A stretch of DNA of 64,000 bases. Origin: Haliotis cracherodii. Lineage: Eukaryota. The notes under the pieces were generated by a model. It did no database searches, had not been told where the DNA came from, and was given only the letters and a program-made list of their open reading frames with translations. Made by a program: the position numbers and the translations under genes. This document shows positions 204-58,049 of this stretch, in pieces. The stretch's first letter is position 1, and each line of letters starts with the position of its first letter. The stretch covers positions 35,588,001 through 35,652,000 of the forward strand of contig NW_027266308.1 of NCBI RefSeq assembly GCF_022045235.1, read 5' to 3'.

Positions 204-453
204 CTATAAGAGAGTATAAATCGCTTTCTAAGACACCGTCCGATTCATGGGAACTTGAAGCACTGTTTGCGTCATGTGTGACAAGCTGAGCGTCATGGTA
301 GACGTAGTCGCTCCAGTCAGTGGCTATCAACAGAGCAGGCTGGTACATATGTTGAGGGTCATCCAGACCTGGGAACTTGGACATATCCAGATCGTAGGTG
401 ATGTTGGTGTCGATACTTAGAGTTTGGAGGAGATGAGTAGGTACGTCCATCAT
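204..453 (-). CDS. LDMxKFPGLDDP-family paralog 1, exon 1 (MMDVPTHLLQTLSIDTNITYDLDMSKFPGLDDPQHMYQPALLIA...ESDLYSLI)
   Basis: Family motif in ORF 157..504. ATG at 453 matches the paralog 2 start (MMDVP). Donor ATAG|GTATGT at 204/203, phase 1. Confidence 0.85.
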
Positions 454-502
454 ATTGAAGGTGACACATGGGAATAATGCCACAACTCGTTTCACCCGGG
501 AC

Positions 503-640
503 ATATAGGCCTGTCAGTAGCGTGACTCTGTAAATGGACCAATCACATCACACGACACTAATCCTAAACAACCAATCAGACGTGAGTTGATATAATGAGA
601 AACGCGACGCCGTTAATTATAACGCGAGGAGAGCCAATGT
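503..640 (-). promoter_or_regulatory. Paralog 1 promoter: TATA-like (507-503), TALE-type CTACTGACAG (519-510), CCAAT at 539, 572 and 634
   Basis: Motifs read directly. Same order and spacing as the paralog 2 promoter. Confidence 0.6.
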
Positions 641-904
641 GTCAAGCGATTACCGAATTGACACGGAGCACCGTCTCGCCCCAGGGCGTCGCTTGTCAGT
701 GGGAGGAGATAAACAATACCCCCAAGATATTTACTCGGCTGGGGTGCGAGCTATTATCGGATCATTTATCATCTTATGATGTACACTGTTTATAGATGTG
801 CCTTGAAATAAACCCCAGACACTGGCGCTTCAGTTTTCTTTCGTTTAACAATAATTTTACATAAATGCGATTTTGAAGACATGTCGAAAACCACGTGGGC
901 AATA

Positions 905-1037
905 NNNNNNNNNNNNNNNNNNNNNNNNNNNNNNNNNNNNNNNNNNNNNNNNNNNNNNNNNNNNNNNNNNNNNNNNNNNNNNNNNNNNNNNNNNNNNNNN
1001 NNNNNNNNNNNNNNNNNNNNNNNNNNNNNNNNNNNNN
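905..1037. other. Assembly gap (N run)
   Basis: N bases. Confidence 0.99.
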
Positions 1038-2029
1038 TGTTATTTCATAGTGATACACACATAAATGCATATGATATAGTCGGAATTGTACAATGAACTT
1101 ATTAAAGATTTCTTAAGATAATGGAAATGATTTTTGTTGCTTTTAACTTTGATGAACCAGGAATACATGGTTTCAAATGTAGTGAGGTAATTTGATTTTA
1201 AGGTTATCTCTCATACAGACCCTCAAACAAACTATATGAAAACTACCATGCAAGTCTGAAACACCCTGTCAAGCCTACAAACTGACGCAATTCTCTAAGA
1301 ATCCTTACTATCATGTATTAAAAAGAAATTTCACCTAAACAATATTAAATATTTACATTTTAGGAGGTAAATGTTCGTCTCGCTTCCACGAATAAGAAGC
1401 AATACATTTAATGTACATCTTATCTGGAGATGATTATTTCAACAAAAGAAGTAAGGGCAATAAAAACTTCATTACTTTACTTATTCAGCGATTAAAAAGG
1501 AGGTATTGTTCCAATAATAGCACCGGTCACACTTTGAACTATAGACCTCCGAGACGCCATGTCCCTGATTACATTAACAAGGGCCATCTTTCACCTGAGT
1601 TCTATTTTTGCTGATACAAGTGGCTATTCATGCGTCGAACGAATTAATAACAGGATGTACACCTTACCTGGACATTATCATCATGTGTCACAACTGACCG
1701 ACCATCTGACCCCAGGGGACATTGGTCGGGACAGAGGAGTCCAACCGTGGATTAAGGGGGAAATTCAATTATGACTAATTTACACAAAATGTCACGTTAG
1801 GGGCGGAGGGGCTGCCCGGGATTAGCTTTTTGTCTTGTATTCATCGCTATTGGCGGTCCTTCTTTGAATTTAACGACAGATGGTAAATGATGCTTACGTG
1901 CAGGTCTTTTATGACATCATTGATGCCAGAGTAATGGTAGCCCTCGTCCGTAATTAACCGTCCCTGAAAGGATTGTTATAGCCCAATTGTTATAAATGAG
2001 ATTATGTAATAGGAAAATATTCTTTTTGA

Positions 2030-2270
2030 GTTTTGTGGGAGGCAACAAAATAATACATCCCTTCTCATCCCGCTACCATAAAACTCTGGCAATTCGCAAG
2101 TTATTGTATGTTTCAAAATTCCAAATTTGCTCTCCAAATTAAGTAAGTAATCCTAAAGGCCCCCCTTTGTTGCCTCACCTTTTCGGATATACCCTTTTCG
2201 ACCAATCACCGAATGGCCTGGCGGGCCCGTGCGCAAAATATGCATATGTCGGAAAGCGCACGTTAAATTC
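2030..2270 (+). repeat. Unclassified dispersed repeat ending AATGGCCTGGCGGGCCCGTG..GTCGGAAAGCGCACGTTAAA; copies at 7860-8095 and 43860-44115
   Basis: Three similar copies. Confidence 0.75.
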
Positions 2271-2885
2271 CCAGTTTACGCACGGACTTGCATAACCTAT
2301 TTATTTAGGTTATGTAGGTCAGTGATTTAAGTAATTAAAAAAAATATATTAACACCTCATTCTTCTGAACTTCCAGTGAACTTTGATCTGGAGTATATAT
2401 TTTTTTCTTGTTAAGCATTTTCTTAAATCCCATCAATCAAGCTCAAACGAATGAGAAGGGGTTAAATCCAAAAATGTGAACTTAATAATACAGACTCATA
2501 TTTCAAAACTAATTGACTTATTAGACATCAAAGTCATCCTTTAATAACCTAAAGCTGCCTGAACGCGGCAGTACATTTCAGATCAATATCGAAAACACAT
2601 CAATAACACGTGAAACATGTCTCCACTGTCATTGATAAACCATAATTATAACCAGTTGCCCATAAACCTATTGATTTACAAGTTGGTGTAATCTCTACTT
2701 TTTGTGTCTATACAAAAGTATGGTAGTTTTGTCCCTGAAACCTTACTTATTTACGTACGCTGTCACAGCTGGTATGTAGACAATCGGTATTCAAAAATAC
2801 TCTACCTATATCACGGCGGCTTGTCTTTGCACGGGTATGGATGTGGCAAACCCGTGACCAACAAGAGCAACGACCGATGCCATCG

Positions 2886-3042
2886 GTGAGTGAGTGAGTA
2901 TGGTTTTACACCGCTGAAGCAATATTCCAGCAATATCACGGCGGGGGACACCAGACATAGGCTTCACACATTGTACCCATGTGGGGAATCGAACCCGGGT
3001 CTTCGGCGTGACGAGCGAACGCTTTAACCACTAGGCTACCCG
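2886..3042 (-). mobile_element. Family B tRNA-derived SINE (A box TAGCCTAGTGG, B box GGTTCGATTCC, (ACTC)n tail)
   Basis: Pol III boxes and tail visible; multiple copies in the window. Confidence 0.88.
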
Positions 3043-3072
3043 ACAGAGCATGACCACATGACCCAGCACAGT

Positions 3073-3333
3073 TTGTTTCGTTTGTTTGTTGTTTAACGCC
3101 GCACTCAGTAATACTGCAGCAATGTGACGGCGTTCTGTAAATAATCGAGTCTGGACCAGACAATAAAGTGATTGAGCATCGATCCACGCAATTGGGATAT
3201 GATGACATGCTTCAACCATGTCAGCGAGCATGACCACCCGATCCCATTTGTCGCATCTTACGACAAGCGAAGTCGCCTTTTTCGACAAGCATGTGTTGCT
3301 GAAGACCTATTCTACGGCGGATCTTCACGGGTG
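3073..3333 (-). mobile_element. Family A SINE-like retroposon (5' GACCCGTGAAG...GCTTGTCGTAAGAGGCGACTAA...GCTGGAATATTGCTGAGTGCGGCGTTAAA(CAAA)n)
   Basis: About 20 full or partial copies in the window, each with a simple-repeat tail. Confidence 0.85.
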
Positions 3334-4057
3334 TGATCCGGCATAGGTACAGAAGGACAAAATGAAACAGTTCTTGTTGAGCGGGAAACTGTCTTACAGG
3401 ATGGGAGGAAACATCTAACGGTTTAGTAAGTGGGTCTGGTTAACGCAAATATGAACAGTATTTCAGTTATATCACGGCGTGACGATTTATGAGAAGAAAG
3501 CGGGAAGTGACGTAGGTTTTAAACATTTTACAATACGATGATTCCCACGCGCACAGGTCTGGTGTTGATCAACCGGGAATCATAATTGAAGCGAATCTGG
3601 TAATCGAACTCACGAATTTAGGTTTCAGGCACGCCCCAGAAGGACACCCTGTGCAGCATACGTCATCGACCTAGACAACTTGGTTACCATGCCTACAAAA
3701 CAGACCTAAATATTAAATCGTTCTGTCTTATATTATATGTGTTTGATAGGCATTACTTAGTAGTTGGCGGATGACAAAGTAGACACAATTTATGGATAAC
3801 AACTTCTTTAATACTGTAAAGGCGACGTTTCGGTATAGACCCTCAGACTGTTGTCCTTGCTTAAATAAGATGTTATCCATAAATTGTGTCTACTTTGTTT
3901 CATTATATCGTTCTCCAGTGACGGAAAAACTTGATGCGTGTACAGTTTAGAAAAAAGGAATATAACCGCATCGGAAACATGCATCAATAGATGCTAACTT
4001 ATCTGGAGATGTTCTTCAAGTGTCAAAGTCCCCAATCAAATACTTCATCAGCAAATG

Positions 4058-4220
4058 AAGTGAGTGAATTGGAATTTACGCCGCCTTTAGCAGTACTCCA
4101 GCAATATCAGGACGGGGGATTCAAGACATAGGCTTCACGCATTGTACCCTTGTGGGGAATCGAACCCGGGTCTTCGGCGTGACGAGCGAACGCTTTAACC
4201 ACAAGACTACCCGACCGCCC
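4058..4220 (-). mobile_element. Family B tRNA-SINE
   Basis: Matches 2886-3042. Confidence 0.85.
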
Positions 4221-4779
4221 CATAAGCAAATGGGTGAGCATTGTGTTAAAAGTATTTGCTTTAACAACTGTAAATAGTATCTACAGTCATATATATATTT
4301 ACTGTAAAAACGCAATGTTAACACTCACTGGAAGATAGACAACGTCATGAACAATCAATCAATACAGTATCGCGTTGACACAATGTGGCTGGAAATATAA
4401 ATGCTAATACCTTATGCAATTAGCAGCGAATACTGATGTTATCTGAAAACATAAAAACGATATCTCGCCCCAGTGATAAAACTGCGGGAACTACTTTCAG
4501 TATGCCTTAAAAACTATATGATAAACAATCACATGATGTTTATTGCATGAGATGACAAAGTATACATATACTTGAGGCTGCGCCATTAAGTAAATAGCAA
4601 TTCGCTTGATAAGATAAACATTTTATTTGACAGAGAAAAGCCAAATACTTCTTTAAACTTACAAGACAAATATAGAAATGATTCATGCATGTAATTCATA
4701 CATGAAATATTATAATTTCCTGTTTTCCACTTGTTCATGGATATAAGCTTTAACATAGTAATTTGTACCAAAATAATCT

Positions 4780-4887
4780 CTATGCTAGAGCTAGCTTAAA
4801 CTGGCTAGACTTGCTTTTGTATGCATTTCTAGATTATTATTTTTTCATAAAATAAATATATCCCACGGTCATGGTGCAGGACTATCA
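4780..4887. repeat. Dispersed repeat with an inverted copy at 46284-46385; 6128-6181 also matches 46419-46471
   Basis: Direct sequence match. Confidence 0.75.
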
Positions 4888-6769
4888 ATAAGTCTTTGAA
4901 AACATTTCTTTAAAATAAGTGTAAGTTTGTTCTTCAAAAGAACTTTTCCTCTTCTGCCGTTTGGTTTAGTTTCATCTAGACTTGCCAAGGTTTTAGTATC
5001 TATATATGTTAATTCCTCTTTCATTGCGCAGGACTAGCATATCACTAACTACTGCACATAACTATATGCTACTCACAAGACGTTAAAGAACACCCTATTG
5101 CTTCATATGACTATCGTTAATTTGTCAAGGCTGGTAGGTATTGCAACACGCATCCTTCCAATTGTGGGTGGTCTTTTACTTGTTTTGAGCAGTATATATT
5201 GGCTTTAGGTAATCTCGCATTGTTTGATGCAATGACGTAATTTTATCTCAAGCTTTAATAGAACGATGTAGCCGAGCAACAACTATCAAACTGTGTATTC
5301 TTTGTGGTCCCTTACGTACCATCTGTTAGCTGCAGTATTGGACGGTCTAGAGTAATTTTTGTCATCGTAAAGCGTTAAAAGATCATTATCTGGATGTGGT
5401 ATTATACAATAAACATCCCGAGGTATTTGTCTCACGCGGCGTTGAATTGCTTTGATCTTTTATCGAGTGCCAGACAATTCAAAGATAGTGTTATTTATTA
5501 CAGTTCCTTCTTTAATGCGATGATAAGAGGGAATGCATGTTTTATCAAGATCAAGGAGACATAAAGCATTTGTCCTTAACAAGAACCTGAATGGTTGCTG
5601 AACTTATTTACCATCAACTATTGACAGTGTAATTAATTACAGTGTTACAAACTATTTTGATTTAGAAAGAAAACATTCAAATAATTTAACGTTAATATTC
5701 CAGCTATTCACATGATTAATAACTGGTGAAAATACCGAGAGTTCTGTAAAGCTTATATGATTTAAACATATCTATTTTCCCCCAAAAATGTGAAAATGGA
5801 TTGGTAAATAAGCGAAGCGCTATGTTAATACCGCTCCATTGATACAATAAATACATTAATGAAGGTTAGATGTAACAAATAAATTGTACATGTCAAGCTA
5901 GATGTGTATACATATTAAAAATATTTGAAGTTTATATTAAACAATTCATTTACTTAATTGAAAATCTGCCAGTTTTTAATGTGAAGTTTTAAAGAGAATC
6001 TAATGTTTGAATGTGCTCTTCCTTACTCAAATGCGAATTTCCGCATAGCACTGTTGGTAAAAGAATAAACATGTTGGTAAAAATACATTTCATTTTATGG
6101 ATATAAACTTTAACATAGTTATTTGTAGTCAAGAAGGATATTGTGTAATATAAGATTTCAGAGACTAAATGTTAGTCTAACTTATTTTTTAGTCTAGTGA
6201 TATGCGTTCCTGTTTTCTATTTCTATCTTAGTCAACTCTTGAATTAAATTCGAATGTGCGTTGTTAGATTTTACTTTGTGAGCATATTAGCGTTGTACTT
6301 AAAGGTTGGATTTTTTATTTGTACGTTTGTCATGAGGCAAATACATTCATGCACATTAAGTATGTGTTGTATTATTTAACATAGAATTTTACAGTTTCGA
6401 ATCAACCTGAAAATACGGGACTGTGAAACGTTGAAAATACCGAACTGTGAATGGCACAAGATACGTAACTGATGAATATACGGGACTGTAAAACGTGAAT
6501 ATTCGGGACTGTCGAACGTTTAAACGATACCGTGAAACACGGCGGTAAGCTTTTATGCGGCATTGCATGTGCGTTATTCTACATAACCGACCATTTGATA
6601 TTCATACAGGGTGTGGTGTATGTGAGGCGCTGGAAATTGTAGTGAGACCAGATGTCTGGATACTTTTTATTTTAATTAAGACTTTGAGTCAAAATATTTT
6701 TTCGATATAAACACATATATTAGTACATGCTCATCTCGATGTTCATAAACTGTGAGAAAAATTTTCACA

Positions 6770-8502: not shown

Positions 8503-8525
8503 GGGGGGGGGGGGGGGGGGGGGGG
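8503..8525. repeat. Poly-G tract
   Basis: Read directly. Confidence 0.95.
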
Positions 8526-9064: not shown

Positions 9065-9417
9065 CTAAGAATCTCTTCCAAAGATGCAATTATTGGAAGT
9101 TGGGTACACAGAAACAAGCGATGGGAGCATTGCTGTATGCGTGTCAACTTCTGTCATTCTGTATTTCTTGCTGGTATACAAATGGTCAGTATCACTGGAG
9201 TGACGTCGCTTCTGGCCCCTTCCGCCTAGGGGCGATAACTGTGATTGGTAACAACAGTCTGTTGAGGATTTTAAATCCGACAAAGTGAAATCTGATTCAT
9301 CCCAAAGGTTGCCGCAAGATGCCGTTGAGGAGATCACTTCATCCAATAGAGCTTCGAAATTGGCATTTTCATCACTGCTTGAATCTGTAAATTCCGGGAA
9401 CAGGACCTCGCTGGATT
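9065..9417 (-). CDS. Paralog 2, exon 2 (ESSEVLFPEF...EALLDEVI...KRRHSSDTDHLYTSKKYR...); spliced protein about 190 aa
   Basis: Acceptor TTTTTCAG| at 9419/9418. Joins in frame with ORF 9065..9346. Bipartite basic motif. Confidence 0.82.
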
Positions 9418-9624
9418 CTGAAAAATGACAATGCAGATATAAATATATATAATATAAACGATTATTATGTTTTTTAATATCTGGTAATTATTTAGATTAG
9501 ATATATTTAGATTTAGCTGAAATATTTGCATAACCTTTGCATAATAATACTGGCTAAAGGATTGTATAAGATACACATAAATGTTTCTGATTCATGCAAT
9601 TTAATAGATTTGGTAGATACATAC

Positions 9625-9844
9625 CTATGAGAGAGTATAAGTCATCCTCAGGAATATCGGCGTCATGTGTGACAAGTTGTGCGTCATGGTAGACGTAGTC
9701 GCTCCAGTCAGTGGCTATCAACAGAGCAGGCTGGTACATATGTTGTGGGTCATCCAGACCTGGGAACTTGGACATATCCAGATCGTAGGTGATGTTGGTG
9801 TCGATACACAGAGGTTGAAGCAGGTGGGGAGGTACGTCCATCAT
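9625..9844 (-). CDS. Paralog 2, exon 1 (MMDVPPHLLQPLCIDTNITYDLDMSKFPGLDDP...EDDLYSLI)
   Basis: Motif in ORF 9554..9877. Donor ATAG|GTATGT at 9625/9624. TATAAA at 9903-9898. Confidence 0.88.
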
Positions 9845-9883
9845 GGTAATTGTAATACTGGGTATGAATGATGGCACAACCGA

Positions 9884-9984
9884 TTACATCACGTCACTTT
9901 ATACCCCTCGTGTCACTCAGGTCACTAAGACTCACTGTGGCAGCGTCCAATCAAATCACTTGGGACCGACTGTACTCATCCAAT
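9884..9984 (-). promoter_or_regulatory. Paralog 2 promoter: TATAAA (9903-9898), TGAGTGACAC (9919-9910), CCAAT at 9947 and 9980, TGATGTAA (9891-9884)
   Basis: Motifs read directly; TATA lies about 55 bp upstream of the ATG. Confidence 0.62.
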
Positions 9985-10443
9985 CAATGGAGGATTTAAT
10001 CAACCATGGCGCGCCGGTTAGAATTACCCACAGCGGTGCTCATTGTGTGACTGATGATTAACATAAGTGACACGATGTATTGCCTCACGCACCCCCACCC
10101 CGTCCCCCTCCAATCCCCCGAGGTTGAATACTTGTATACCCCGGGGTGTTTGTTTGACAATACCTGTGAAATACTCGCGGATTACAAATCAGCTTTGATG
10201 TTGTTTTTGTCTGGCAATTTATCTGAGGAGGTTGTAATTATTCACACGTTGAAACGCTTTCAATTCACCGCTGTGTAATCGTAGTAAATAGTAGGCTTTG
10301 TTGATTTAATGCTTCACCCATGGGTATTAAGTTCTGGTGAGACTACAAAAGTATTATTTTTTAATTTGGGTTATCGCGCCATCCCTGTGTAATGATGGCA
10401 TTTGGTTTTTCATTTGTTTTCTGTTGGCGGTGTCTCTGTCTAT

Positions 10444-10585
10444 GGGGGCGTAGCCTGATGGTTAAAGCGTTGGCTAGTAACTCAGAAGGCCCGGGTTCGA
10501 TTCCCCCAATACATGAACACGTACTGCGTGTGAAGCCGTGACATTGCTGGAATATTGCTTGCACAGAAACGCATATCACTCACTT
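10444..10585 (+). mobile_element. Family B tRNA-SINE, degenerate
   Basis: A and B boxes and tail. Confidence 0.75.
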
Positions 10586-20202: not shown

Positions 20203-20554
20203 ATGTTACATCCAGCTGCTACAGTGTCTCCGCAACTAAAACAGCCGCTGTACATCGACACGGACATTAACTACAGTTTGGATATGTCCAAGTTCCCTGG
20301 TCTGGACGACCCTTCCCACCTTCAGCAGCCAGCATTGTTGATCGCCACAACGGACACACTTTCAAACTATTTCTATCATTGTGCACATGCCATTACGCCT
20401 AGTGAAGTTACAGATGCTGACAATGCCATGTCTACCTGTTGTGTGCAGTATCCTAAGCACGTGGATGCACCTTCCAAGTTTCCCGATAACAACATTAGCA
20501 ATCATTCTGATGCATCTTGTGGACATATCTTGGAGGATATTCTTAATGTGATAG
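20203..20554 (+). CDS. Paralog 3, exon 1 (MLHPAATVSPQLKQPLYIDTDINYSLDMSKFPGLDDP...LEDILNVI)
   Basis: Motif in ORF 20203..20577. Kozak-like CACCATG. Donor ATAG|GTAAAT at 20554/20555. Confidence 0.88.
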
Positions 20555-20824: not shown

Positions 20825-21282
20825 ATACCTGCGCGGACGGATTACTTGAACGATTAATGAAGATTCCAGAGAGTACAATCTCAAACAATACGATAGTACC
20901 AAACAGGAATACACCTCATCAGTGTCACTCTGATCTGTCACACCCACCTCTGTTATCAAGGAACTACCAGCAGAATGGACAAATACATTACAGATTCTTC
21001 CATGGTGCGAGACACGTCCAGAACAACACACCTTCATGTCCTACAGGTGATACTGGATTACGTCGGATTTCTGACTGTGTGCGTAATCTGCAGTCCTTGT
21101 CAGCTGTCAAAGATAGTGTATCTTACAAGAGGAAGCGAACACATGACGGGCTTGAATCTGACATACAAAAGCGACAATGTAAAGGACTCGATACTTTCGA
21201 TATTGGTCGTTACTATGGTTACCATGGATCGTATCTTGGATATCAGCAAGTGCCACCGTTTACAAGACGCGTTGTGACGTAA
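20825..21282 (+). CDS. Paralog 3, exon 2 (DTCADGLLERLM...VRNLQSLSAVK...KRKRTHDGLESDIQKRQCK...); spliced protein about 269 aa
   Basis: Acceptor CCCTTTCTTCAG|. In frame with ORF 20782..21282. Alignable to paralog 4 exon 2. Confidence 0.87.
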
Positions 21283-21857: not shown

Positions 21858-22009
21858 NNNNNNNNNNNNNNNNNNNNNNNNNNNNNNNNNNNNNNNNNNN
21901 NNNNNNNNNNNNNNNNNNNNNNNNNNNNNNNNNNNNNNNNNNNNNNNNNNNNNNNNNNNNNNNNNNNNNNNNNNNNNNNNNNNNNNNNNNNNNNNNNNNN
22001 NNNNNNNNN
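21858..22009. other. Assembly gap (N run), preceded by a family A SINE fragment
   Basis: N bases. Confidence 0.99.
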
Positions 22010-27200: not shown

Positions 27201-27594
27201 ATGAGGAGATATACTGAAATGGAGGTTGGTGTTCCTGTGCCCCTGCGACTGCAACAACCACTGTTCATCGAAACCGACATCACCTACAATCTGGATATGA
27301 CAAAGTTTCCAGGTCTGGATGACCCACAACAAATGTACGAGCCGGCTCTTCTAATTGCATCCCAAGAGAACCCATGGAGTTGTCCAGACTACAGTGGAAC
27401 CCTACCGACGGCAAGCAACACCAGATATAGTTCCCAGCCTTGCAGAAACAACCCTCTAACACAAACCCAATGCAGATTTGTGCCAATGAATAATGTTCCA
27501 AGCATCCTGAACAATACCTCAAGGGACAAGATGTTTCATGCGACAGAAGAATCTTCACCACAAAATCTCCTAGAAGACGTACTTTACATGATAG
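27201..27594 (+). CDS. Paralog 4, exon 1 (MRRYTEMEVGVPVPLRLQQPLFIETDITYNLDMTKFPGLDDP...LEDVLYMI); alternative start at 27219
   Basis: Motif in ORF 27201..27626. Donor ATAG|GTAACA at 27594/27595. Confidence 0.88.
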
Positions 27595-28022: not shown

Positions 28023-28486
28023 ATTCCTGTCCTAACGGATTACTTGACAAGCTTGTGGACACTAATGTGAGTTCAACCAGTTCTTGTGACTACACAGCCA
28101 ACCGGATACCTCATTGTCCTTCTTATCTGGCAAACGGACCGTGTCGACCACCAACGTACCTGGACAATGCACAACCCTTGTACATGCACAATAGCGTGGA
28201 TGGCACCAGACATTGGGAGTACAATACTCGCGTGTTTCCTTCAAGAGACGGATTAACTCACATCCCGGATTATGTTCGTAATCTCTCTGCTTTGTCATGT
28301 GTTAAGACCAACGCTTGTTCCAAACGAAAACGGAGCAATGATGAAGTTGAATCTGATTCTGTGAAGCGACGCTGTAAAGCTCCCCAATCTATGGGTGCAA
28401 TGTATCCCTATGGTTACAGTGTACCTTACTCGGGACAATATCAATCATTTCATGAGACAATGTTCGGTAGAAGCCTCATGACATGA
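28023..28486 (+). CDS. Paralog 4, exon 2 (DSCPNGLLDKLV...VRNLSALSCVK...KRKRSNDEVESDSVKRRCK...); spliced protein about 285 aa
   Basis: Acceptor TATATTACAG|. In frame with ORF 27968..28486. Homologous to paralog 3 exon 2. Confidence 0.87.
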
Positions 28487-39757: not shown

Positions 39758-40374
39758 GGGTATGTGAATGAAGCACATCAACCAAATATATCAGCAGCGT
39801 GAATCATTTACCTTTCCTGATACTACACAGGGCGGTGGTGGGATCCTAGCGGTTAAAGCGTTCGCTCGTCACGCCGTATACCCGGTTAATATAGCCACTC
39901 CGAAGCATGTAAGGCCACTAACGGTATCACAAGGCTGACGGGAACGGGTGAGGTTCAAGACGATTAATGCTTGATGCAGTGATTGTCTTGTGGAAATTGT
40001 ATGTCCGCTTCAGTTAACACTGAAATGATAGATTAAAAAGTGGCGTTTTCGTTCGTTATACCATTACTCTGCTCGATAACGATAGACGCACATTGATATT
40101 ATGTAGTCATTCTTGCATTTGCACCAACATGGTGTAACTTACGATTGCATTTACAAGCTGTGTGACTGTTATCCAACTGACTGTGTTAACAAAGTGTAAG
40201 AGCACGCTCGTGTGGGTTTCATTTAACGCCGCTTTGAACAGTATTTCAGTTATATCACTGCGTGTCAGAAAGATGCGGGTGTTGAGCCCGAAGTGATGCG
40301 GATCTAAGAAGTTTACCATGTTGGTGATACCCACGAAACGGTACCGTGTGATGGATTGATAAAGTACACGTCGA

Positions 40375-42990
40375 TATGATTAGTCGTGTAGGGATAAAGT
40401 ACATGGTGTATATGATTAGTCGTGTAGGGATAACGTACATGGTGTATATGATTAGTCGTGAAGGGATAAAGTATATGGTGTATATGATTACTCGTGTTAG
40501 GATAACATACACCATGTATATGAGTAGTCGAGAAGGAATAAAGTACATGGTGTATATGATTACTCTTGTCAGGATAAAATACATGATGTATATGATTATT
40601 CGTGTTTGGATAACATACATGATGTATATGATTAATCGTGTAGGGCTTAAGTACATGTAGTATATGATTACTCGTGTTAGGATAACATACATGATGTATA
40701 TGATTACTCGAGAACGGTTGAAGTTCATGGTGTATATGATTACTCGTGTCAGGATAAAATACATGATTACTCGTGTTAGAAAAATCTACATGGTGTATAT
40801 GATTACTCGTGTTAGGATAACATACATGAGGTATATGATTAATCGTGTAGGGATTAAGTACATGTAGTATATGATTACTCGTGTTAGGATAACATACATG
40901 ATGTATATGATTACTCGTGTAGGGATTAAATTCATGGTGTATATGGTTACTCGTGTTAGGATCACATACATGATGTATATGAATAGTCGTGAAGGGATAA
41001 AGTACATGATGTATATGATTACTCGTGTTAGGATAACATACATGATGTATATGATTACTCGTGTAGGGATAAAGTACATGGTGTATATGGATACTTATGT
41101 TAGGATAAAGTACACAATGCATATGGTTACTGTGTAAGGATTAAATACATGATCTATATCATTCCTCGTGTAAGGATAATTTAATGGTATATATGATTAC
41201 TCGTGCTAGGATAAAATACATGATGTACTTGTAGTATATGATGACTCGTGTAAGGATAATGTACATGGTGTATATGGTTACTCATGTTAGGATAAAGTAC
41301 GTTATGCACATGGCTGCTGTTGTAAGGATTAAGTACCTGATATCTATGAATACTCGTGGAGGGATAAAGAATACGATGTATATCATTACTCGTGTAGGAT
41401 AAAGTACAGGATGTATGTGGTTACCAATGTAGGATAAAGAACATGATGTACTAGTAGATGGTTACTCATGTAGGATAAAGAACATGGTGTACTGGTATAT
41501 AATTACTCATGTAGGATAAAGAACATGGTGTACTGGTATATGGTTACTCATGTAGGATAAAGAACATGGTGTACTGGTATATGGTTACGCATGTAGGATA
41601 AAGAACATGGTGTACTGGTATATAATTACTCATGTAGGATAAGGAACATGGTGTACTGGTATATAATTGCTCATGTAGGATAAAGAACATGATGTACTGG
41701 TATATGGTTATTCATCTAGGATAAAGCACAGGATGTACTGGTATATAATTACTCATGAAAGATAAAGAACATGATGTACTGGTATATGGTTATTCATCTA
41801 GGATAAAGTACATGATTTACTAGTAGATGGTTACTCATGCAGGATAATGCACGTGATGTACAAGTAGATGGTTACTCATGTAGGATAAAAAAACATAATG
41901 TACTGGTATATGGTTACTCATGTAGGATAAAAAAACCATGATGTACTAGTATATGATTACTCGTGTAGTATAAAAAAACATGATGTACTAGTAAATGGTT
42001 ATTCATCTAGGATAAAGTACAGGATGTGTATACTTACTCATATAGAATAAAGTACAGCGTGCATATGGTTACTCGTGTCGGATAAAAAAACCATGATGTA
42101 CTAGTTTATGGTTACTCATGTAGGATAAAAAACATGATGTACTAGTTTATTGTTATTCATATAGGATAAAGTACAGGATGTGTATAGTTACTCATATAGA
42201 ATAAAGTACAGTGTGCATATGGTTACTCATGTAGGATAAAAAACATGATGTACTGGTATATGGTTACTCATGTAGGATAATGAACATGATGTACTGGTAT
42301 ATGGTTACTCATGTAGGATAAAAAACATGATGTACTAGTATATGATTACTCGTGTAGTATAAATAACATGATGTACTAGTATATGGTTATTCATCTAGGA
42401 TAAAGTACAGGATGTGTATAGGTACTGATATAGAATAAGGTACAGTGTGCATATGGTTACTCGTGTAGGATAAAGAACATGATGTACTGGTATATGGTTA
42501 CTCATGTAGGATAATGAACTTGATGCACTGGTGTATGGTTACTCATGTAGGATGAAAAACATGATGTACTAGTTTATGATTACTCGTGTAGTATAAATAA
42601 CATGATGTACTATTTTATGATTACTCGTGTATGATAAAAAACTAGATGTACTAGTTTATGGTTACCCGTGTAGGATAAAAAACATGATGTACTAGTTTAT
42701 GGTTATTTATCTAGGATAAAGTACAGGATGTGTATAGTTACTCATATAGAATAAAGTACAGCGTGCATATGGTTACTCGTGTAGGATAAAAAAACATGAT
42801 GTACTAGTTTATGGTTACTCATGTAGGATAATGAACATGATATTCTGGTATATGGTTACTCATGTAGGATAATGAACATGATGTACTTATATATGGTTAC
42901 TCGTGTTGGATAAAATACATGGCGTATTTGATTACTCATGTAATCACCCGTGTTAGTACAAAGTACATGCTGGACATGATTAATCGCGTA
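40375..42990. repeat. Minisatellite array, unit about 33-34 bp changing to about 39 bp (GTATATGATTACTCGTGTAGGATAAAGTACATGAT)
   Basis: About 70 degenerate tandem units read directly. Confidence 0.95.
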
Positions 42991-49767: not shown

Positions 49768-49808
49768 GCGCGTGAAGTTGTGAAGCAATAGTCACAATGC
49801 CATTCACC

Positions 49809-50055
49809 ATGCAAGACGTTCCTTCCCGCTTTCTTCAACCGCTGTTTATCGACACCAACATCACCTACGATCTGGATATGTCCAAGTTCCCAGGTCTGGA
49901 CGACCCACAACACATGTACCAGCCTGCTCTGTTGATAGCCACTGACTGGAGCGACTACGTCTACGGTCATTGTGACGCAAAGCGCGTCACGGGTGATGCT
50001 GTCATCAAACTGAACGAATCTACACGTTTCCAACAAAATGGACCCTCACCAACGG
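49809..50055 (+). CDS. Paralog 5, exon 1 (MQDVPSRFLQPLFIDTNITYDLDMSKFPGLDDP...GPSPT); alternative start at 49797
   Basis: Motif in ORF 49797..50069. CACCATG start. Phase-1 donor ACGG|GTAATA at 50055/50056. Confidence 0.85.
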
Positions 50056-51088: not shown

Positions 51089-51179
51089 CATATTTCAGCC
51101 ATATCGTGATAGGGCTCATATTTGTATCGATGTTAATATTGTCATGCAACACTTTAATGACTGTCTATTATTTCTGCAG

Positions 51180-51565
51180 AGTCTCCATTTCGTCTTCTGT
51201 CCGGCCCTGGCTGCTGCGGACCATTAGATTCGGACACGTACAAGGTCATGCTTGATGACGTCATCAAAGACGCAGCACTCTCAAGTCACGTGTTTGACTT
51301 CGTTGATACAGACCCGGATGCTTGCAAATCTGATTTAACAGACATTACAGGTGTATTGACAGAAGGGATATTTGGAGAGGCTGACGTTTCTGGGGACAAT
51401 CAGAAATACGCAAATGATCGGAAACGAAACCGGCCATGTGATAGCGAGTTTGGTATCAGCGCAAACAAGAAATCCAAAATGGTGGACAGGTCTCTCGACC
51501 GTCTTCCGAGCCGTTTATCGGTATGTCTCACTTCAAGATCTTTGGAATCAAACCGAGGATCATGA
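51180..51565 (+). CDS. Paralog 5, exon 2 (ESPFRLLSG...VMLDDVI...RKRNRPCDSEFGISANKKSK...); spliced protein about 210 aa
   Basis: Acceptor TTTCTGCAG| at 51179. The phase-1 join reads stop-free into ORF 51248..51565. Bipartite basic motif. Confidence 0.8.
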
Positions 51566-51878: not shown

Positions 51879-54389
51879 AGTAAATAATCAAGTCTGGACC
51901 AGACAATTCAGTGGTTAATATCATGAGCATCGATCCACGCAATTGGGATACGATGACATGCATCATGCAATTCGTGTTATTCCGGGTCTTCTTGCAGGTT
52001 ACAGAAAGGGGCGCGTGGCCACCCGATCCCGTCAGTCGCCTCTTACGACAAGCATAGTCGCCTTTTACAGAAAGCATTGGTTGTTGAAGACCTATTCTTC
52101 CCTGGATCTTCACAAACCAGTGGTTGATAGCATGAGCATCGGACGACACCGTCGCGACATGATGACATCAGACTCATATATGGACCGCATCACCTGGTCA
52201 TGACGACACATACAATGGTGTAAATATATTGTACTCCCCATTGCCATGGATTTCGGAAACACGGGACATCAAATCCTGGCCAGTCTATCTCTGTGGTCAG
52301 TTTGTTAATGATATTTAACGCCGATTCTAACAATATTTCAACTATATAACTTAGGCTTCATGTTTTGTTCCCATTATGTTCTCGAATCCGTGTTTTGGGC
52401 GTGAAGTTGGTTTGTTGTTTAACGCCGCACTCAGCAATATTCCATCTATATGACAGCGGTCTGTAAATAATCGAGTCTGGACCAGACAATGCAGTGGTTA
52501 ATATCACGAGCATCGATCCACGCAATTGGGACCGATAACATGCATCAACCAAATCAGCGAGCCTGACCACCCGATCCCGTTAGGCGCCTCTTACGACAAG
52601 CATAGTCGCCTTTTACGGCACGCATAGGTTGCCTATTCTACCCCGGATCTTCAAGGGTCAGTTTTGTGAATGAAGCACATCAACCAAATATATCAGCAGA
52701 GTAAATCATTTAACTTTCCCGATACTACACAGGACGGTGGTGGGATCCTAGCGGTTAAAGCGTTCGCTCGTCACGCCGTATGCCCGGTTAATATAGCCAC
52801 TAGCCTGACCACCCGATCCCGTTAGTCGCCTTTTACGACAAGCATAGTCACCTTTTACGGCAAGTATGGGTTGCTGAAGACCTATTCTACCCCGGATCTT
52901 CACGGGTCTTGGGCGTGAAGCTTTCGCCGCTTTCACAACGACGTGGTTCGTTATATGTTTAAACCATTGTGATGAAGTCATACAATTGTTGCAGCTGATT
53001 TTGAGCCACGAAGTCACCAGCCATTCTAAATGTGCATTTTAATCAAGTAAAAGTGCGCAACGTGGTTTAAGAAATAACGAGAATCTGTTGGCTCGTGGAT
53101 TCTACTTCGGGAATCACAGATACTCATGATTACTCCATTACTTATTTAAATCCGTGAAAGGTAAGAATTGTTTTATAGCAACCTATGCTTGTCGCACGAG
53201 GCGACTGACGGGATCGGGTGGTCAGGCTCGCTGACTTGGTTGATGCATGACATCGTACCCCAGTTGCGTTGATCGATGCTATCACTGGATTGTGGAGTGT
53301 GGCGTTAAACAAACCAAACAAAAAACTTTTGCAATTGTTATTGACACCAAGATTACTATCAATCATATTTAGTTGATATTGGTATCTCATATAAAAAGAC
53401 GTTGAAAAAAAGAGCATATTTGAACAACACAAGTACTTATTTGATATATATAATTCACAAAATTCTCGAACTGTCTGGCGTCTAGAAAGAGAAACTTCCT
53501 ATGCTATAGCTGGTGAGTGCGGCGTTAAACAACAAACAAACAAAACATTTGTTGACGATGAAGTCTTCGTCAGTATCTGTCCAACAGCTTACGTTCAATC
53601 GGTGAATTCGATAAGCTCAACATGGTGTCTCTCGAAAAGATGACCAATGTAAAAATGTACTACGGGACACATGAAGTGTCCGACTAACTTGTGCTTTAAT
53701 TAAACAAAAGTAAGTTATAAATTTTACCCTTGACAGAGCTTGGTATTTAAATAACACAATGTATGATGTAATGTGACTTCCCTCTGGTCAAAGCGCTTGT
53801 TAAAGTCATATTACACAACTTCAAGTCCACATTCATCTGATCAGGGATGGCCACATGTTATCAGGTCAGTGTGTGGACACATATCAAGACAACGTGTACA
53901 CATATATAAAGTCAACATTTCAGCCTATATCAAGTCAACGTTGTCATATTTATCAAGTCAATGTGTCTATATATCAGTGAGTGAGTAAGTTGGGTTTAAC
54001 GCCGCTTTTAACAGTATTCCAGTTATATCATGGCGTGTCAGCTAAATGTGGGAGGAAAGCCCGAAGTGATGCAGGTCTCAGACGTTTACCACTTCAGTGA
54101 AACCCACGAGCACGGGTATTGTGCTGACAAACCTAGAAACGTAATCGGGGCGAACCGGGATTCGAACTCACAATCATAGGTTTCTGGCGTGCCCAAGGGA
54201 CGCAACTCTGCACTGCGAATCCAGTGATTTCAGCATGAGCATCGATCCTCGCATTTGGGATACGATGACATGCATCAACCAAGTCAGCGAGCCTGACCAT
54301 CCGATCCCGTTAGTCGCCTCTTACGACAAGCATAGTCGCCTTTTACGGCACGCATAGGTTGCCTATTCTAACCCAGATCTTTACGTGTC
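51879..54389. mobile_element. Pile-up of family A copies (51879-52112 -, 52406-52659 -, 52801-52897 -, 53178-53322 +, 54220-54389 -)
   Basis: Repeated matches to the family A consensus between the convergent paralogs 5 and 6. Confidence 0.8.
53976..54220 (-). mobile_element. Family C SINE, 5'-truncated and fused to a family A copy
   Basis: Matches family C. Confidence 0.82.
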
Positions 54390-54805
54390 CAATGATAATT
54401 ATGAAGACACACAATACGTAAATCCGTTTCTAGAGCATCTCGTCTGTGATTATGGGAGAATATTATTGTTTTCGTTCACACCTTGAAAAGACATATTCAC
54501 CAGATGTGCCAACTAAAGAGATTCACTCTTTTGTTTAGGAAATGTCACCACTGCGTCATGCAAGAACTGACTATTGAGAATTGGATGGTTACAATGTGGG
54601 TCTGATTGTGGGTCATCGTGACCCGACTACGAGGATCAGTGCTCATGCTATCAATCATTCATTTCTTTCGACGTGACTAAAAACTGATTTGACCAAAAAC
54701 GTACAAATGTCATCAAAACGTAATTTGGCTGAAAACATGCGCCAAAACTCGACAAACAAATACATCACCATCGAAAAACCATTTCGTGTTTGTTTTATCT
54801 AAGAT

Positions 54806-55331
54806 CATCTTCCCGAGGTAAGGGAGTTGGATGACCGTAAAAGTCCAGTTTCCACCCTTGCCGAACAAGGTTTGAATTTCTGGGCTCGGTCGTAGCGCAG
54901 CCAGTGGCTATGACGAGTTATGTGCCTCTCTCCTACTGACCAACCGATTCCAACTTTCATATCACTTGCATTTGCTTCAAACAAATGGCGGCGCCCAGAC
55001 AAGACGTTCAGATCTATGATAAAGATCTGTATTGTAATAAAATGAGCCTTACTTCGCGAAGTGCATCAAATCCCTCTGGCATCTTGATTAGAAACATGAA
55101 AGGCTTTGGATATCTGTTGACGCCGAGTTGGCGGTATACATGCTTTACAAATCCTGCAATCGACGTAATCTGCACAACAGTTGACGAGCCGGATGTCGAT
55201 TTCGATGGGACTATTATTAGTATGAACAGACTCGTAAGTAGCCCAAATACAAATCCATAATTTCAGCCTAGTTCGGCAAGGATGGAAACTGGACTTTTAT
55301 AGACTGTTAACTCCCTTACTTTGATAAGATG
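54806..55331. mobile_element. MITE with about 70-bp imperfect TIRs (GTAAGGGAGTT...TAAAAGTCCAGTTTCCA..CTTGCCGAAC)
   Basis: The two ends are reverse complements. Confidence 0.78.
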
Positions 55332-55748
55332 TCGAACCTGGGCGTATACTTTCTTTTGTCCGATAGTGTACACGTAGATGTAATGGTGACTACAAAATAA
55401 AACACCATTCAGTCACTCGCACCTTGTAACCAACTAGTAGATCTAATCGTCATTTTATCCGGGTTCGTGAGAGTTCACGTCACGTTAAACGATTCACCCT
55501 TCTTATGGGGATTTCTTTTTACAAAGAAAATAAATGAAAAAAAAGACATAGATCAAAATATTTATTCAACATATTTAACATAAAAATAACAATAAAACGG
55601 TATATATGTTTACACAGCAATTCAAAATCGCTGGAGCAAAACCGCTCGATATATAAACTGCATATAAAACTGCACAGCATTTCAAAATCGCAGGAGCAAA
55701 ACTGCTCGTTATATCCCCACAAATGCAGACATTTAGTGAGGTTCGGCC

Positions 55749-56167
55749 CTACGACTCTCTTCGACTTCGCGTTCCGCATTCATCTGATGACATTCTTGGG
55801 GTAGCGTTTGTCATTTCATCACCAAGGCGTAGGTGATGAAGACAAGTTCCAAGGTAAGCAGCATACATGCTGCAAGACTGACACACACCTTCTGTGGCAC
55901 AGGGTTCCCGGAACAAAGCTGCAACATCATCACAAGAGGATGCTGTGTGTCGCCACTGGTTCCCATGGTGATCGTTGCTCAGATAGTAATTGTCTTGGTG
56001 GTACACACTGTCGAAACAGCCTGTCCTATTAAGCATATGGACATCCGTATTGGGAGAATCATATACCATCTCCAGTAGGTCCAGTTCGTCATCAGATGGC
56101 ATGGCATATATGACGTCATTCGGGGGACCTTTTGTGGCGTCGCTAGGAGGTGACAAATTGCAGGAAT
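55749..56167 (-). CDS. Paralog 6, exon 2 (DSCNLSPPSD...DELDLLEMV...TRSRRES); spliced protein about 232 aa
   Basis: Acceptor TTTTTCAG| at 56169/56168. The phase-1 join gives D-S, in frame with ORF 55749..56201. Confidence 0.75.
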
Positions 56168-56202
56168 CTGAAAAATTGAACATACGAGGTTTTACGCACA
56201 TA

Positions 56203-56700
56203 TGCGTAGTGTGATGATCATGATGTCAATCACTGGATCGTCTGGTCCAGACTCGAGTATTAACCAACTGCCGTCATATTGCTTGAATATTGAGTGCGGC
56301 GTTCAAAAACAAATAATCAAACAAACAATATCACTTAAATGTGGACATACGAGGTTTTACGCATATATATTCAAAAGGTCCATATCCTTCCCAGCGTTCG
56401 GAGAATGAAATTTTCATCGAAGTTTCATTTTTGTTATTTCCATCTGAATTCCTGTCTCGTCACAAGTTATCAATAAACCTATTTGCAAAATAAATCTCAA
56501 GAGGCGACTAACGGGATCGGGTGGTCAGGCTCGCTGACTTGGTTGATGCATGTCATCGTATCCCAAATGCGTAGTGCGATGCTCATGATGTCAATCACTG
56601 GTCCAGACTCGAGTATTAAGCAACTGCCGTCATATTGCATGAATATTGAGAACGGCGTTAAAGAACAAATAATCAAACAAACAATATCACTCAAATGTGG
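56203..56700 (+). mobile_element. Two family A fragments in the paralog 6 intron (56203-56330 and 56498-56685)
   Basis: Match the family A 3' portion. Confidence 0.8.
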
Positions 56701-57017
56701 ATCGGTTGGTTAAATGTATGGTCTGGTTTTGTGAGTGAGTAAGTTAAAGTTTTACGTCACATCGGCAATATCTCGGCCATATAGTGACGAGAACAAATTG
56801 AAAGATAACTCTGGTTTTGTGTATGTGATCGCACCCGAGTGTGTCCACCAATAATATGCCACTGGTTTTCTTGGTCCAAACTGTATTATTACAGGTAAGA
56901 TGAGGTGGGGTGAAATTCCGTGTCTCATTATTCTGACTCCCAGCCGACGGTGGTCCGATCAACGGGCGTATCATACCAAAAGACGGTACGGGTTGTTGCC
57001 CCGCCTAGCGCTCGGCG

Positions 57018-57563
57018 ACGGCCTCCGTGGTCTAGTGGTAGAGCGGAAGGTCCGGGGTCGATCCCCGTCACACCAAAAGACGTTAAAAGGTGGTACTTGT
57101 TGTTACCCTGTCTGGTACTCGGCTTTAAGGGGCTAAACAATGACTGGTCGACTCATATACTGTCAGTATATTGTGTATGAATAGGGTGTCATGCTAAACA
57201 GCCAATCTCTGTGGGCTGACATTACAAAATCGGTAAAGTCCGGACTACTACAAACAGCCACACACGTGCATACACATCGATACAAAAGCGCAATAACCCC
57301 ATGACGTTGAATCCCTTTCAACCTCACCGGCCCAACCCGGCCTTGGCTTTTTTGCCGTAAAGAGATGAGGTGAGATTGTGTTCAACGTTACTTTCATGAG
57401 TATTTTTTTTCTCTCTCTCTACTGAGTATACTGACTCCAAGCCGACCATTTCTTGGTTCAGCCCCTTATTGCCGAACGCCAGGGGATATGACGCAGCCGG
57501 GGATCGAACCACCGACCTTCCGTTCTCCGATCAGACGCTCTATCCACTAGACCACGGAGGCGT
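57018..57563. mobile_element. Inverted pair of family D SINEs in the paralog 6 intron
   Basis: Plus-strand copy 57018-57280 and minus-strand copy 57420-57563. Confidence 0.75.
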
Positions 57564-57769
57564 TGGATCATTGCCAGCCCCGTGATTAACTTGTACACTG
57601 CCGACAGCGGAGCAAAACAACAATCACTTTACTGCTGTTGGTAGGTCCGTCTTTATGAATAAAGTCTGAATTTGACAAGAGTTATATTTTTGACTGATAG
57701 CATTAGGGCTAAGCAAACACTAAAATAGGTTTCAATTCCATACAAGGTACCAGTATTTCATGTACTTAC

Positions 57770-58049
57770 CGATCAATGTGTACAAATCCTCTTCGATGCT
57801 GTGGCTGTGTCCGGAATATGTGTAGCCAATATCGTCGTCGACATCCGACGTTGCCCAGGCGTCTTCTACAACGTCGCCATGCTCTGACAACACGGAGATC
57901 CACGAGACGCGGGACTCTGGGGATTCTATCAACAGAGCAGGCTGGTACATATGTTGTGGGTCATCCAGACCTGGGAACTTGGACATATCCAGTTCGTAGG
58001 TGATGTTGATGTCGACGACGAGGGGTTGAAGTAGCGGCGACGACATCAT
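57770..58049 (-). CDS. Paralog 6, exon 1 (MMSSPLLQPLVVDINITYELDMSKFPGLDDP...EEDLYTLI)
   Basis: Motif in ORF 57732..58052. Consensus donor ATCG|GTAAGT at 57770/57769. Confidence 0.87.

What the first reader, a model, noticed from the sequence alone, without database searches (positions are those of the whole stretch)
298..58015. Motif-coding DNA is near-identical between distant paralogs whose other sequence is unalignable (patch gene conversion)
Seen in sequence: the 117-nt block 9689-9805 (paralog 2) differs from 298-414 (paralog 1) at 1 site and from 49848-49964 (paralog 5, inverted, 40 kb away) at 2 synonymous sites. The 90-nt block 57926-58015 (paralog 6) differs from 9715-9804 at 2 sites. 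For paralogs 5 and 6, similarity collapses just outside the block, and the second exons cannot be aligned. Protein-level selection alone would not preserve synonymous sites. Inference: recurrent interlocus gene conversion homogenises only the constant cassette, or there is an overlapping DNA/RNA-level constraint. Paralogs 3, 4 and 7 have escaped this.
Basis: partly seen in the sequence, partly recalled or inferred. Interest (0 to 1): 0.75.

Follow-up and report, generated by a model that had tools for sequence, protein, structure and literature searches.

The report
Patch gene conversion in abalone paralogs
A cluster of uncharacterised abalone genes keeps one short stretch of its first exon almost letter-identical because the copies repeatedly overwrite each other there, a well-known process seen here clearly in a previously undescribed gene family.

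Summary
The window holds seven two-exon paralogs of a mollusc-restricted, disordered, NLS-bearing family with no Pfam match. The chromosome carries 26 copies.

In p1, p2, p5 and p6 a 90-117-nt block differs at 1-3 sites. Conserved residues just outside it, and in exon 2, use different codons about half the time. At identical amino acids, 0-3 of 25-28 block codons differ, against 5/8 to 28/40 outside (Fisher p 1.3e-8 to 1.5e-3).

- **Two-breakpoint mosaics:** three copies show them.
- **Variable tract ends:** the converted tracts begin and end at different places.
- **Normal synonymous drift:** where no exchange occurred, block synonymous sites diverge at the normal rate.
- **Species-specific states:** protein models from other Haliotis species share states across paralogs, including a p2-to-p1 event after the split from H. 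rufescens.

RNA structure, Rfam and antisense-ORF checks found nothing. Four independent runs recover the block-in-unique-flank arrangement, and one spliced contig confirms the p2 model. The N gaps touch no exon.

This is a new example of a known process, and the scan has noted similar cases elsewhere in this genome. No nucleotide data from a distant species were available.

The parts
204..453 (-). p1 exon 1 (ATG 453..451; phase-1 donor after 204); homogenised block at 298-414
   Evidence: translation identical to the N-terminal 83 residues of P0030
1..39 (-). start of p1 exon 2, cut by the window's start (acceptor AG at 40-41)
   Evidence: the rest lies in locus L002
9625..9844 (-). p2 exon 1; block 9689-9805
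   Evidence: a spliced contig of run X13 joins 9625 to 9417
9065..9417 (-). p2 exon 2 with stop codon (acidic region, basic KRR..KK NLS-like stretch, C-terminal tail)
20203..20554 (+). p3 exon 1; motif-coding stretch 20254-20343, diverged at DNA level (22 of 90 differ from p2)
20825..21282 (+). p3 exon 2 with stop codon
27219..27594 (+). p4 exon 1 (an upstream in-frame ATG lies at 27201); motif-coding stretch 27267-27356, intermediate divergence (13 of 90)
28023..28486 (+). p4 exon 2 with stop codon
49797..50055 (+). p5 exon 1; block 49848-49964
   Evidence: both exon translations are found in P0003, a named H. cracherodii model
51180..51565 (+). p5 exon 2 with stop codon
57770..58049 (-). p6 exon 1; p2-like tract within 57926-58016, followed by a 'SPxxxxSW' tail of another lineage
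55749..56167 (-). p6 exon 2 with stop codon
61759..62116 (-). p7 exon 1; motif-coding stretch begins at 62077, diverged at DNA level (30 of 90)
60061..60587 (-). p7 exon 2 with stop codon
905..1037 (.). assembly gap (N), upstream of p1; not part of any exon
21858..22009 (.). assembly gap (N), downstream of p3; not part of any exon

Best explanation
The window is part of a 250-kb tandem cluster on one abalone chromosome. The cluster holds 22 copies, and 4 more copies lie 29 Mb away. The genes belong to an uncharacterised, mollusc-restricted two-exon family. Each protein has a constant N-terminal motif of 30-39 residues (..LQPLxIDTNITYDLDMSKFPGLDDPQHMYQPALLIA..), a variable acidic middle, a basic NLS-like stretch and a short tail. 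It is predicted to be disordered. About a dozen copies, in both orientations and up to about 160 kb apart, repeatedly exchange short patches of about 70-175 nt of exon 1 by non-reciprocal, paralog-templated repair (interlocus gene conversion). Shown: near-identity confined to the patch, including synonymous sites; two-breakpoint mosaics; variable tract ends; and states that are species-specific but shared by paralogs. Inferred: protein-level selection on the motif keeps enough DNA identity there to seed heteroduplex, while the diverged flanks stop it, so conversion is self-confining. Copies whose block has drifted far (p3, p7 and others) no longer take part. Also inferred: the motif is a linear docking peptide for a partner common to all paralogs, and the variable part gives each copy its own activity in the nucleus.
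For: Codon mismatch at identical residues: among p1, p2, p5 and p6 the block gives 0-3 of 25-28, against 5/8 to 28/40 for upstream plus exon 2 (Fisher p 1.3e-8 to 1.5e-3). One representative of each of 8 lineages gives 86/743 in the block against 530/1193 outside (p 4e-56; pairs are not independent).
Mosaics: L003 is L005-like on both sides and p2-like from -19 to +143 (informative sites 12:1 inside, 3:42 outside, p 6e-9). p6 carries the tail of the 'SPxxxxSW' lineage but is p2-like over nt 16-87 (13:0 vs 18:39, p 4e-6 with L016; 5:0 vs 19:44, p 0.004 with L013). L010 is L009-like with a p1-like patch at +147..+219 (26:1 vs 1:38, p 4e-16), and the displaced old exon end lies in its intron.
Normal clock where no exchange occurred: L003/L011 vs L005-8 give 44/242 in the block and 126/827 in exon 2.
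Diverged copies encode the same motif with 13-35 of 90 nt different.
Cross-species proteins: exon-2 identity is 0.47-0.98 within ortholog groups and 0.17-0.38 between them. Block codon 22 is Q in 3 of 3 H. asinina paralogs examined and H in the 8 H. rufescens/H. cracherodii models examined. Codon 8 is E in H. rufescens p2, p5 and p6 but D in this genome's p2 and p5. p1 of this species has D and QL like p2, where p1 of both H. rufescens and H. asinina keep N and C.
Block GC3 is 0.54-0.71 against 0.39-0.46 in exon 2 of the same 12 copies.
Independent data: in 4 of 4 runs contigs pile up on the block (summed word depth 69-317 against 3-9 on the flanks). Contigs of X11 bridge both p2 block junctions. 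An X13 contig skips 9418-9624 (GT..AG on the gene strand).
There is no RNA structure (z +0.69) and no Rfam match.
Against: No nucleotide sequence from a distant Haliotis species could be obtained. The four runs laid are only about 1.5-4% diverged in the p2 flanks, so the test 'are the same synonymous bases fixed in distant species' was not done.
The cross-species argument rests on 1-3 amino-acid sites per event.
The block is also less diverged than exon 2 towards the second cluster 29 Mb away (234/1052 vs 870/1533) and towards p4 (79/261 vs 142/232). This may be older or rarer conversion, but some codon-level constraint would look the same.
Elevated GC3 is not specific: escaped p3 has 0.69.
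In run X14 no listed contig bridges a p2 block junction with 31 letters on both sides.
Donor direction is inferred only for the p2-to-p1 event.
Confidence: 0.85

Rival explanations
1. Nucleotide-level constraint. The block doubles as an RNA or DNA element (structure, small-RNA target, intragenic regulatory site or overlapping reading frame) whose sequence is selected, so synonymous sites are frozen.
For: The 5' edge of near-identity falls within a few nt of block position 1 in several pairs. The block stays less diverged than exon 2 even towards the distant second cluster. An open antisense stretch of 76 codons covers the p2 block.
Against: Tract ends vary between events and reach beyond the block. 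Block synonymous codons diverge at the exon-2 rate between L003/L011 and L005-8. Variable sites among homogenised copies are mainly synonymous third positions, as are the paralog variants seen in four other runs. p3, p7 and L021-L024 keep the peptide with 22-35 of 90 nt changed. Fold z-score is +0.69 with 155 of 200 shuffles as stable, and there are 0 Rfam matches. The antisense stretch is confined to exon 1 and has no other support.
Confidence: 0.07
2. Recent whole-gene duplication followed by very fast divergence of everything but the motif, with no exchange between copies.
For: Some copies are recent whole-locus duplicates: L005-8 are 88-97% identical over 1.7-2.6 kb, and L013/14 and L016-19 are similar cases.
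Against: Introns, promoters and exon 2 of p1, p2, p5 and p6 give no DNA alignment, and their conserved residues use different codons 45-75% of the time. Neutral sites cannot diverge that far while adjacent synonymous sites stay identical. The p1, p2 and L009/10 lineages each have an ortholog in H. asinina, so they are old. The mosaics have two breakpoints.
Confidence: 0.04
3. Assembly or polishing artefact. The identical block was written into several copies by collapse or by multi-mapped reads.
For: The window has two N gaps. The block is a repeat at which short-read contigs break. No long reads were available.
Against: Copies keep their own 1-10 differences per 117 nt. Contigs of run X11 bridge both junctions of the p2 block into p2-specific flanks, and 4 of 4 runs show the same pile-up and the same edges. 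Block words are held by 20 runs of 5 coded organisms in 12 studies. Protein models from separate assemblies of H. rufescens and H. asinina carry the same motif in several paralogs. The gaps lie outside all exons.
Confidence: 0.03

Closest known systems
Mosaic (domain-restricted) gene conversion between linked paralogs, e.g. the two Dlx genes of the annelid Capitella teleta (PMC3199776; passages read)
   Same: A tract of about 150 bp confined to the most conserved coding part of otherwise diverged, closely linked and partly inverted paralogs. Identity extends to the nucleotide level. That paper calls the 'mosaic' pattern within a gene well documented.
   Different: Here about a dozen copies take part rather than two. 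They span up to about 160 kb and both orientations, the gene family has no known function, and the homogenised part is a short linear motif rather than a folded domain.
Concerted evolution of tandem gene families (Drosophila Hsp70, amylase, trypsin; Nematostella Nv1 toxin genes), as listed in PMC3199776 (passage read)
   Same: Non-reciprocal exchange keeps paralogs alike within a species, so copies group by species rather than by ortholog.
   Different: In those families whole coding regions are homogenised. Here only 70-175 nt are, and the rest of each gene keeps its own ortholog-specific sequence.
Other conversion-homogenised clusters noted by this scan in the same genome (s1-829601 FoxAB forkhead box; also s1-829728, s1-845459, s1-823212)
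   Same: Same genome and same pattern: the conserved module is homogenised and the flanks stay diverged.
   Different: Those are other gene families on other pieces. They are AI notes that I did not check.
Concerted evolution of the abalone egg receptor VERL repeats
   Same: Abalone, with homogenisation of repeated coding units within a species.
   Different: VERL concerns tandem repeats inside one gene, not patches exchanged among separate genes.

Membership tests
Interlocus (ectopic) gene conversion / concerted evolution | Similarity at synonymous sites inside the tract far above that of neighbouring coding sequence | tested here: met
   Block 0-3 of 25-28 codons differ against 5/8 to 28/40 outside for p1, p2, p5 and p6.
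Interlocus (ectopic) gene conversion / concerted evolution | Mosaic copy with two breakpoints: flanks follow one lineage, the tract follows another | tested here: met
   L003 (p 6e-9), p6/L012 (p 4e-6 and 0.004) and L010 (p 4e-16).
Interlocus (ectopic) gene conversion / concerted evolution | Tract groups by species while the rest of the gene groups by ortholog | tested here: met
   Tested at protein level only. Exon-2 identity is 0.47-0.98 within ortholog groups and 0.17-0.38 between them. Codons 2, 8, 22 and the tail QL/C states are shared by paralogs within a species. There are few sites and no nucleotide data.
Interlocus (ectopic) gene conversion / concerted evolution | GC-biased signature (raised GC3 in the tract) | tested here: inconclusive
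   GC3 is 0.54-0.71 in the block against 0.39-0.46 in exon 2 for the 12 homogenised copies, but escaped p3 has 0.69.
Interlocus (ectopic) gene conversion / concerted evolution | Formal GENECONV/RDP test on a multi-species nucleotide alignment | not testable with these tools
   No collection here holds other Haliotis genomes. Triplet Fisher tests within the genome were used instead.
Any curated protein family (Pfam-A) | Match above the gathering score | tested here: not met
   Ten exon translations were scanned. No family reached its cut-off; the best was Crust_neurohorm at 19.5 bits against a cut-off of 25 on p6 exon 2.
Structured RNA element (Rfam, or a stable fold) | Covariance-model match, or folding energy below shuffles | tested here: not met
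   0 Rfam matches at E up to 1 in 9400-10000. z-score +0.69.
Folded protein domain for the constant cassette | Confident compact model | tested here: not met
   AF2 on p2 exon 1 with 26 aligned sequences: mean pLDDT 67.7, pTM 0.23, and no helix of 4 or more residues or strand of 3 or more in residues 10-47, which hold the cassette; the listed elements are helices 6-9, 48-58 and 66-72. The Atlas model of P0002 has pLDDT 0.43 and pTM 0.13.

The most novel reading that the evidence does not exclude
The constant cassette is a docking peptide that all paralogs present to one shared partner. Patch conversion would then be the means by which a change in that peptide (such as H22Q in H. asinina or D8E in H. 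rufescens) spreads through a dozen genes at once. The whole family would co-evolve with its partner while each variable, NLS-bearing tail keeps its own function. This would be molecular drive acting on a short linear motif rather than on a domain or a whole gene.
Probability: 0.15. Interest if true: 0.6.

Novelty: new member of a known kind. Interest (0 to 1): 0.4.

Why it matters
The cluster gives an unusually clean natural record of very short conversion tracts (about 70-175 nt). The events include datable ones that followed a recent species split. Exchange occurs between inverted copies and across up to about 160 kb. Partaking and escaped paralogs sit interleaved in the same cluster. The locus is therefore useful for measuring how much identity is needed for ectopic repair in a mollusc genome. 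It also warns annotators and phylogeneticists that exon 1 of this family does not follow the gene tree. Finally, it flags an unstudied mollusc-wide family (Haliotis, Lottia, Patella, Mytilus, Mizuhopecten, Pinctada) with a strongly conserved N-terminal motif. The process itself is textbook, and similar cases were noted elsewhere in this genome by the scan.

Tried and rejected
**Protein family searches.**
- Pfam on ten exon translations gave nothing above cut-off.
- A PDB profile search gave only Mex67 at E 0.1 and 0.47, rejected as chance.
- The Atlas gave a best feature hit of 0.81 to a CIITA fragment cluster, below the level the tool calls meaningful. I kept it only as a hint of an acidic disordered protein.
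- AF2 gave no fold.
- phmmer against 1.84 billion representatives gave 29 hits at E up to 0.001. One of them (P0016, TPR-like repeats) looks like a false positive.
- The search for homologous proteins with P0002 residues 1-70 returned only 9 proteins.

**Literature.** A search for 'Haliotis' + 'gene conversion' + 'paralogs' gave 7 papers, none on this family. A search for six LOC names of the H. rufescens models gave 0 papers. 'Not in print' rests on these two searches only. Supplementary files were not seen.

**Deep cross-species nucleotide test.** Not possible. The runs found and laid are close relatives, with p2 flanks about 1.5-4% different, so they cannot separate conversion from constraint. 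Table 3 also left 25 differences unlisted.

**dN/dS of exon 2.** The listed differences give 7 synonymous and 3 non-synonymous changes. The list is incomplete, so I make no claim of diversifying selection.

**Motif readings.** From recall I considered several short-motif readings of the cassette (SIM, LIR, B56, D-box, LxxLAP). None fits across paralogs and none was tested, so I claim none.

**Other checks.** The GC3 and gBGC test was inconclusive. The antisense open stretch has no support.

Full report
**What is there.** The window is G000:C45:35588001-35652000 of a 1.18-Gb, 80-contig genome. It carries seven two-exon genes on both strands.
- Every copy has a phase-1 intron after '...L(Y/F)xLI|G' (in p5 after '...SPT|G'). 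Exon 2 begins with 'ag|A(A/T/G)(T/A)C'.
- The p2 model (exon 1 9625-9844, exon 2 9065-9417, minus strand) is confirmed by a 590-nt contig of run X13 that skips 9418-9624, with GT..AG on the gene strand.
- The exon-1 translation of p1 is identical to the first 83 residues of P0030. Both p5 exon translations are contained in P0003. Both are models that their source names Haliotis cracherodii.
- The two N gaps (905-1037, 21858-22009) lie 452 nt upstream of the p1 ATG and 576 nt downstream of the p3 stop codon. No exon or block touches them, nothing here depends on continuity across them, and I did not fill them.

**The family.**
- Pfam gave no family above cut-off for ten exon translations.
- phmmer of p2 exon 1 against 1.84 billion representatives gave 29 hits at E up to 0.001.
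- Every hit that carries a name is 'uncharacterized' or 'hypothetical'. The named species are Haliotis (asinina, rufescens, cracherodii, rubra), Lottia, Patella, Mytilus, Mizuhopecten and Pinctada.
- Members share an N-terminal motif with invariant L, Y, F, P, G, an acidic 'DDLxxLI' exon end, an acidic 'LLDDV'-like stretch, a basic KRKR..KRxK stretch and a short tail.
- The Atlas model of P0002 has pLDDT 0.43. AF2 on p2 exon 1 with 26 aligned sequences gives pLDDT 67.7 and pTM 0.23, with no regular secondary structure across the cassette.
- I read the motif as a linear docking peptide on a disordered nuclear protein. This is inference, not a shown function.
- The joined (spliced) proteins of the window were never built or searched. 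All work was done exon by exon.

**Extent in the genome.**
- The 117-nt block finds 20 places on this chromosome. The exon-1 peptide finds 26: 22 between 35.40 and 35.65 Mb and 4 at 6.72-6.74 Mb.
- Eleven copies carry the full 117 nt with 0-10 pairwise differences.
- p6 carries the first 90 nt with 3 differences from p2, and L013/14 have 5 differences in the same stretch.
- Differences from p2 in 90 nt for the more diverged copies:

| Copy | Differences in 90 nt |
|---|---|
| p4 | 13 |
| second cluster (L016-19) | 14-15 |
| p3 | 22 |
| p7 | 30 |
| L021-L024 | 28-35 |

- Diverged copies are interleaved with homogenised ones, and genes of both orientations take part.

**Is it more than chance or protein constraint?**
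- At residues identical between two copies I counted how often the codon differs.
- Among p1, p2, p5 and p6 the block gives 0-3 of 25-28. The 11-13 codons upstream plus exon 2 give 5/8 to 28/40 (Fisher p 1.3e-8 to 1.5e-3).
- Right next to the block, the conserved 'LLQPL' is written with different Leu and Pro codons in the four genes.
- One representative from each of eight lineages gives 86/743 in the block against 530/1193 outside. The nominal p is 4e-56, but the pairs are not independent.
- p3, p4 and p7 among themselves give 32/54 in the block and 60/111 in exon 2. So the peptide does not dictate the codons.

**Conversion or constraint.**
- Mosaics. Alignable flanks allow triplet tests.
  - L003 follows L005 on both sides (80% over -392..+786) but follows p2 from -19 to +143. 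Informative sites are 12:1 inside against 3:42 outside (p 6e-9).
  - p6 has the 'ESPESRVSW' tail of the L013/L016 lineage but is p2-like over nt 16-87. The counts are 13:0 against 18:39 with L016 (p 4e-6) and 5:0 against 19:44 with L013 (p 0.004).
- L010, outside the window, is L009-like up to +138 and p1-like from +147 to +219 (26:1 against 1:38, p 4e-16). The displaced L009-type exon end lies about 204 nt further on in its intron at 74% identity.
- Tract ends differ from event to event, which fits repair tracts and not a fixed element.
- Between L003/L011 and L005-8 the block codons differ as often (44/242) as exon-2 codons (126/827). Block synonymous sites therefore drift normally when no exchange happens.
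- Variable sites among L001-L011 are mostly third-position synonymous. The paralog variants seen at 10% or more in four other runs are GAT/GAC, GAT/GAC and ACC/ACT.
- The block RNA folds no better than shuffles (z +0.69) and nothing in Rfam matches. A 76-codon antisense open stretch has no other support.

**Across species (proteins only).**
- Exon-2-encoded parts group by ortholog. The p1 group shows 0.61-0.95 identity, p2 0.66, L009/10 0.47-0.74 and p5 0.98, against 0.17-0.38 between groups. So p1, p2 and L009/10 predate the split from H. asinina.
- In the motif, codon 22 is Q in all three H. asinina paralogs examined. It is H in all eight H. rufescens/H. cracherodii models examined.
- Codon 8 is E in H. 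rufescens p2, p5 and p6 but D in this genome's p2 and p5.
- p1 of H. rufescens and H. asinina both have N at codon 2 and C in the tail. p1 of this genome has D and QL, exactly as p2. That points to a p2-to-p1 conversion after the split from H. rufescens, spanning roughly nt 4 to 130.
- These are few sites, and species labels are those given by the sources.

**Artefact?**
- Block words are held by 20 runs of 5 coded organisms in 12 studies.
- On window:8900-10250 all 4 runs laid show single-copy depth on the flanks (3-9) and a pile-up on the block (69-317). Loose ends show many different flanks at the same edges.
- X11 contigs 9081-9724 and 9760-10187 bridge both junctions of the p2 block.
- In X14 no listed contig bridges a junction with 31 letters on both sides.

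**Limits.**
- The laid organisms differ from the window by only about 1.5-4% in the p2 flanks. They therefore cannot show whether distant species share the synonymous bases.
- The block is also less diverged than exon 2 towards p4 (79/261 vs 142/232) and towards the second cluster (234/1052 vs 870/1533). I read this as older or rarer exchange, but weak constraint would look the same.
- Block GC3 is raised (0.54-0.71 against 0.39-0.46 in exon 2), as GC-biased conversion predicts. However, escaped p3 has 0.69.

**Comparison and verdict.**
- Mosaic conversion limited to the most conserved part of linked paralogs is well documented. One example is a 150-bp tract in the two Capitella Dlx genes (PMC3199776, passages read).
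- This scan has noted similar cases on other DNA of this genome (unchecked notes).
- This is a clear new example in an undescribed mollusc family, not a new kind of process.
- Two literature searches found nothing on the family. Supplementary files were not seen.

Noticed in passing
window 40358-42921: A 2.5-kb minisatellite of about 70 copies of a 36-41-nt unit at 74-80% matches. It explains the GC-skew spike of +0.33 at 40-42 kb.
   Followed up: partly
window 10440-10510: A tRNA-like stretch (GGGGGCGTAGCC...GGTTCGATTCCCCC) upstream of p2, probably a tRNA-derived SINE. ARAGORN calls no tRNA gene in the window. Similar fragments recur as open stretches near p5, p6 and p7.
   Followed up: partly
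window 9880-10000 and 510-600 (gene-strand upstream of p2 and p1): Both promoters carry two CCAAT-type boxes (ATTGG on the gene strand) within about 150 nt of the ATG, although the promoters are otherwise unalignable.
   Followed up: no
window 9689-9694: The p2 orthologs in runs X11 and X13 lack 6 nt here. This matches the missing 'YV' in the H. rufescens p2 model P0043, an in-frame deletion at the 3' edge of the block.
   Followed up: partly
L010 = G000:C45:35565426-35568542 (outside the window): A chimeric paralog. A p1-like patch of about 75 nt supplies the exon-1 end and donor, and the older L009-type exon end lies about 204 nt downstream in the intron at 74% identity.
   Followed up: yes
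proteins P0015 and P0021 (unnamed ENA contigs): Two family hits carry the N-terminal motif two or three times in tandem inside one protein, followed by the same KRKR..KR stretch.
   Followed up: no
window 55752-56165 (p6 exon 2): Weak sub-threshold Pfam match to the crustacean CHH/MIH neurohormone family (E 9e-4, 19.5 bits against a cut-off of 25) over a Cys-rich stretch. Probably chance.
   Followed up: no
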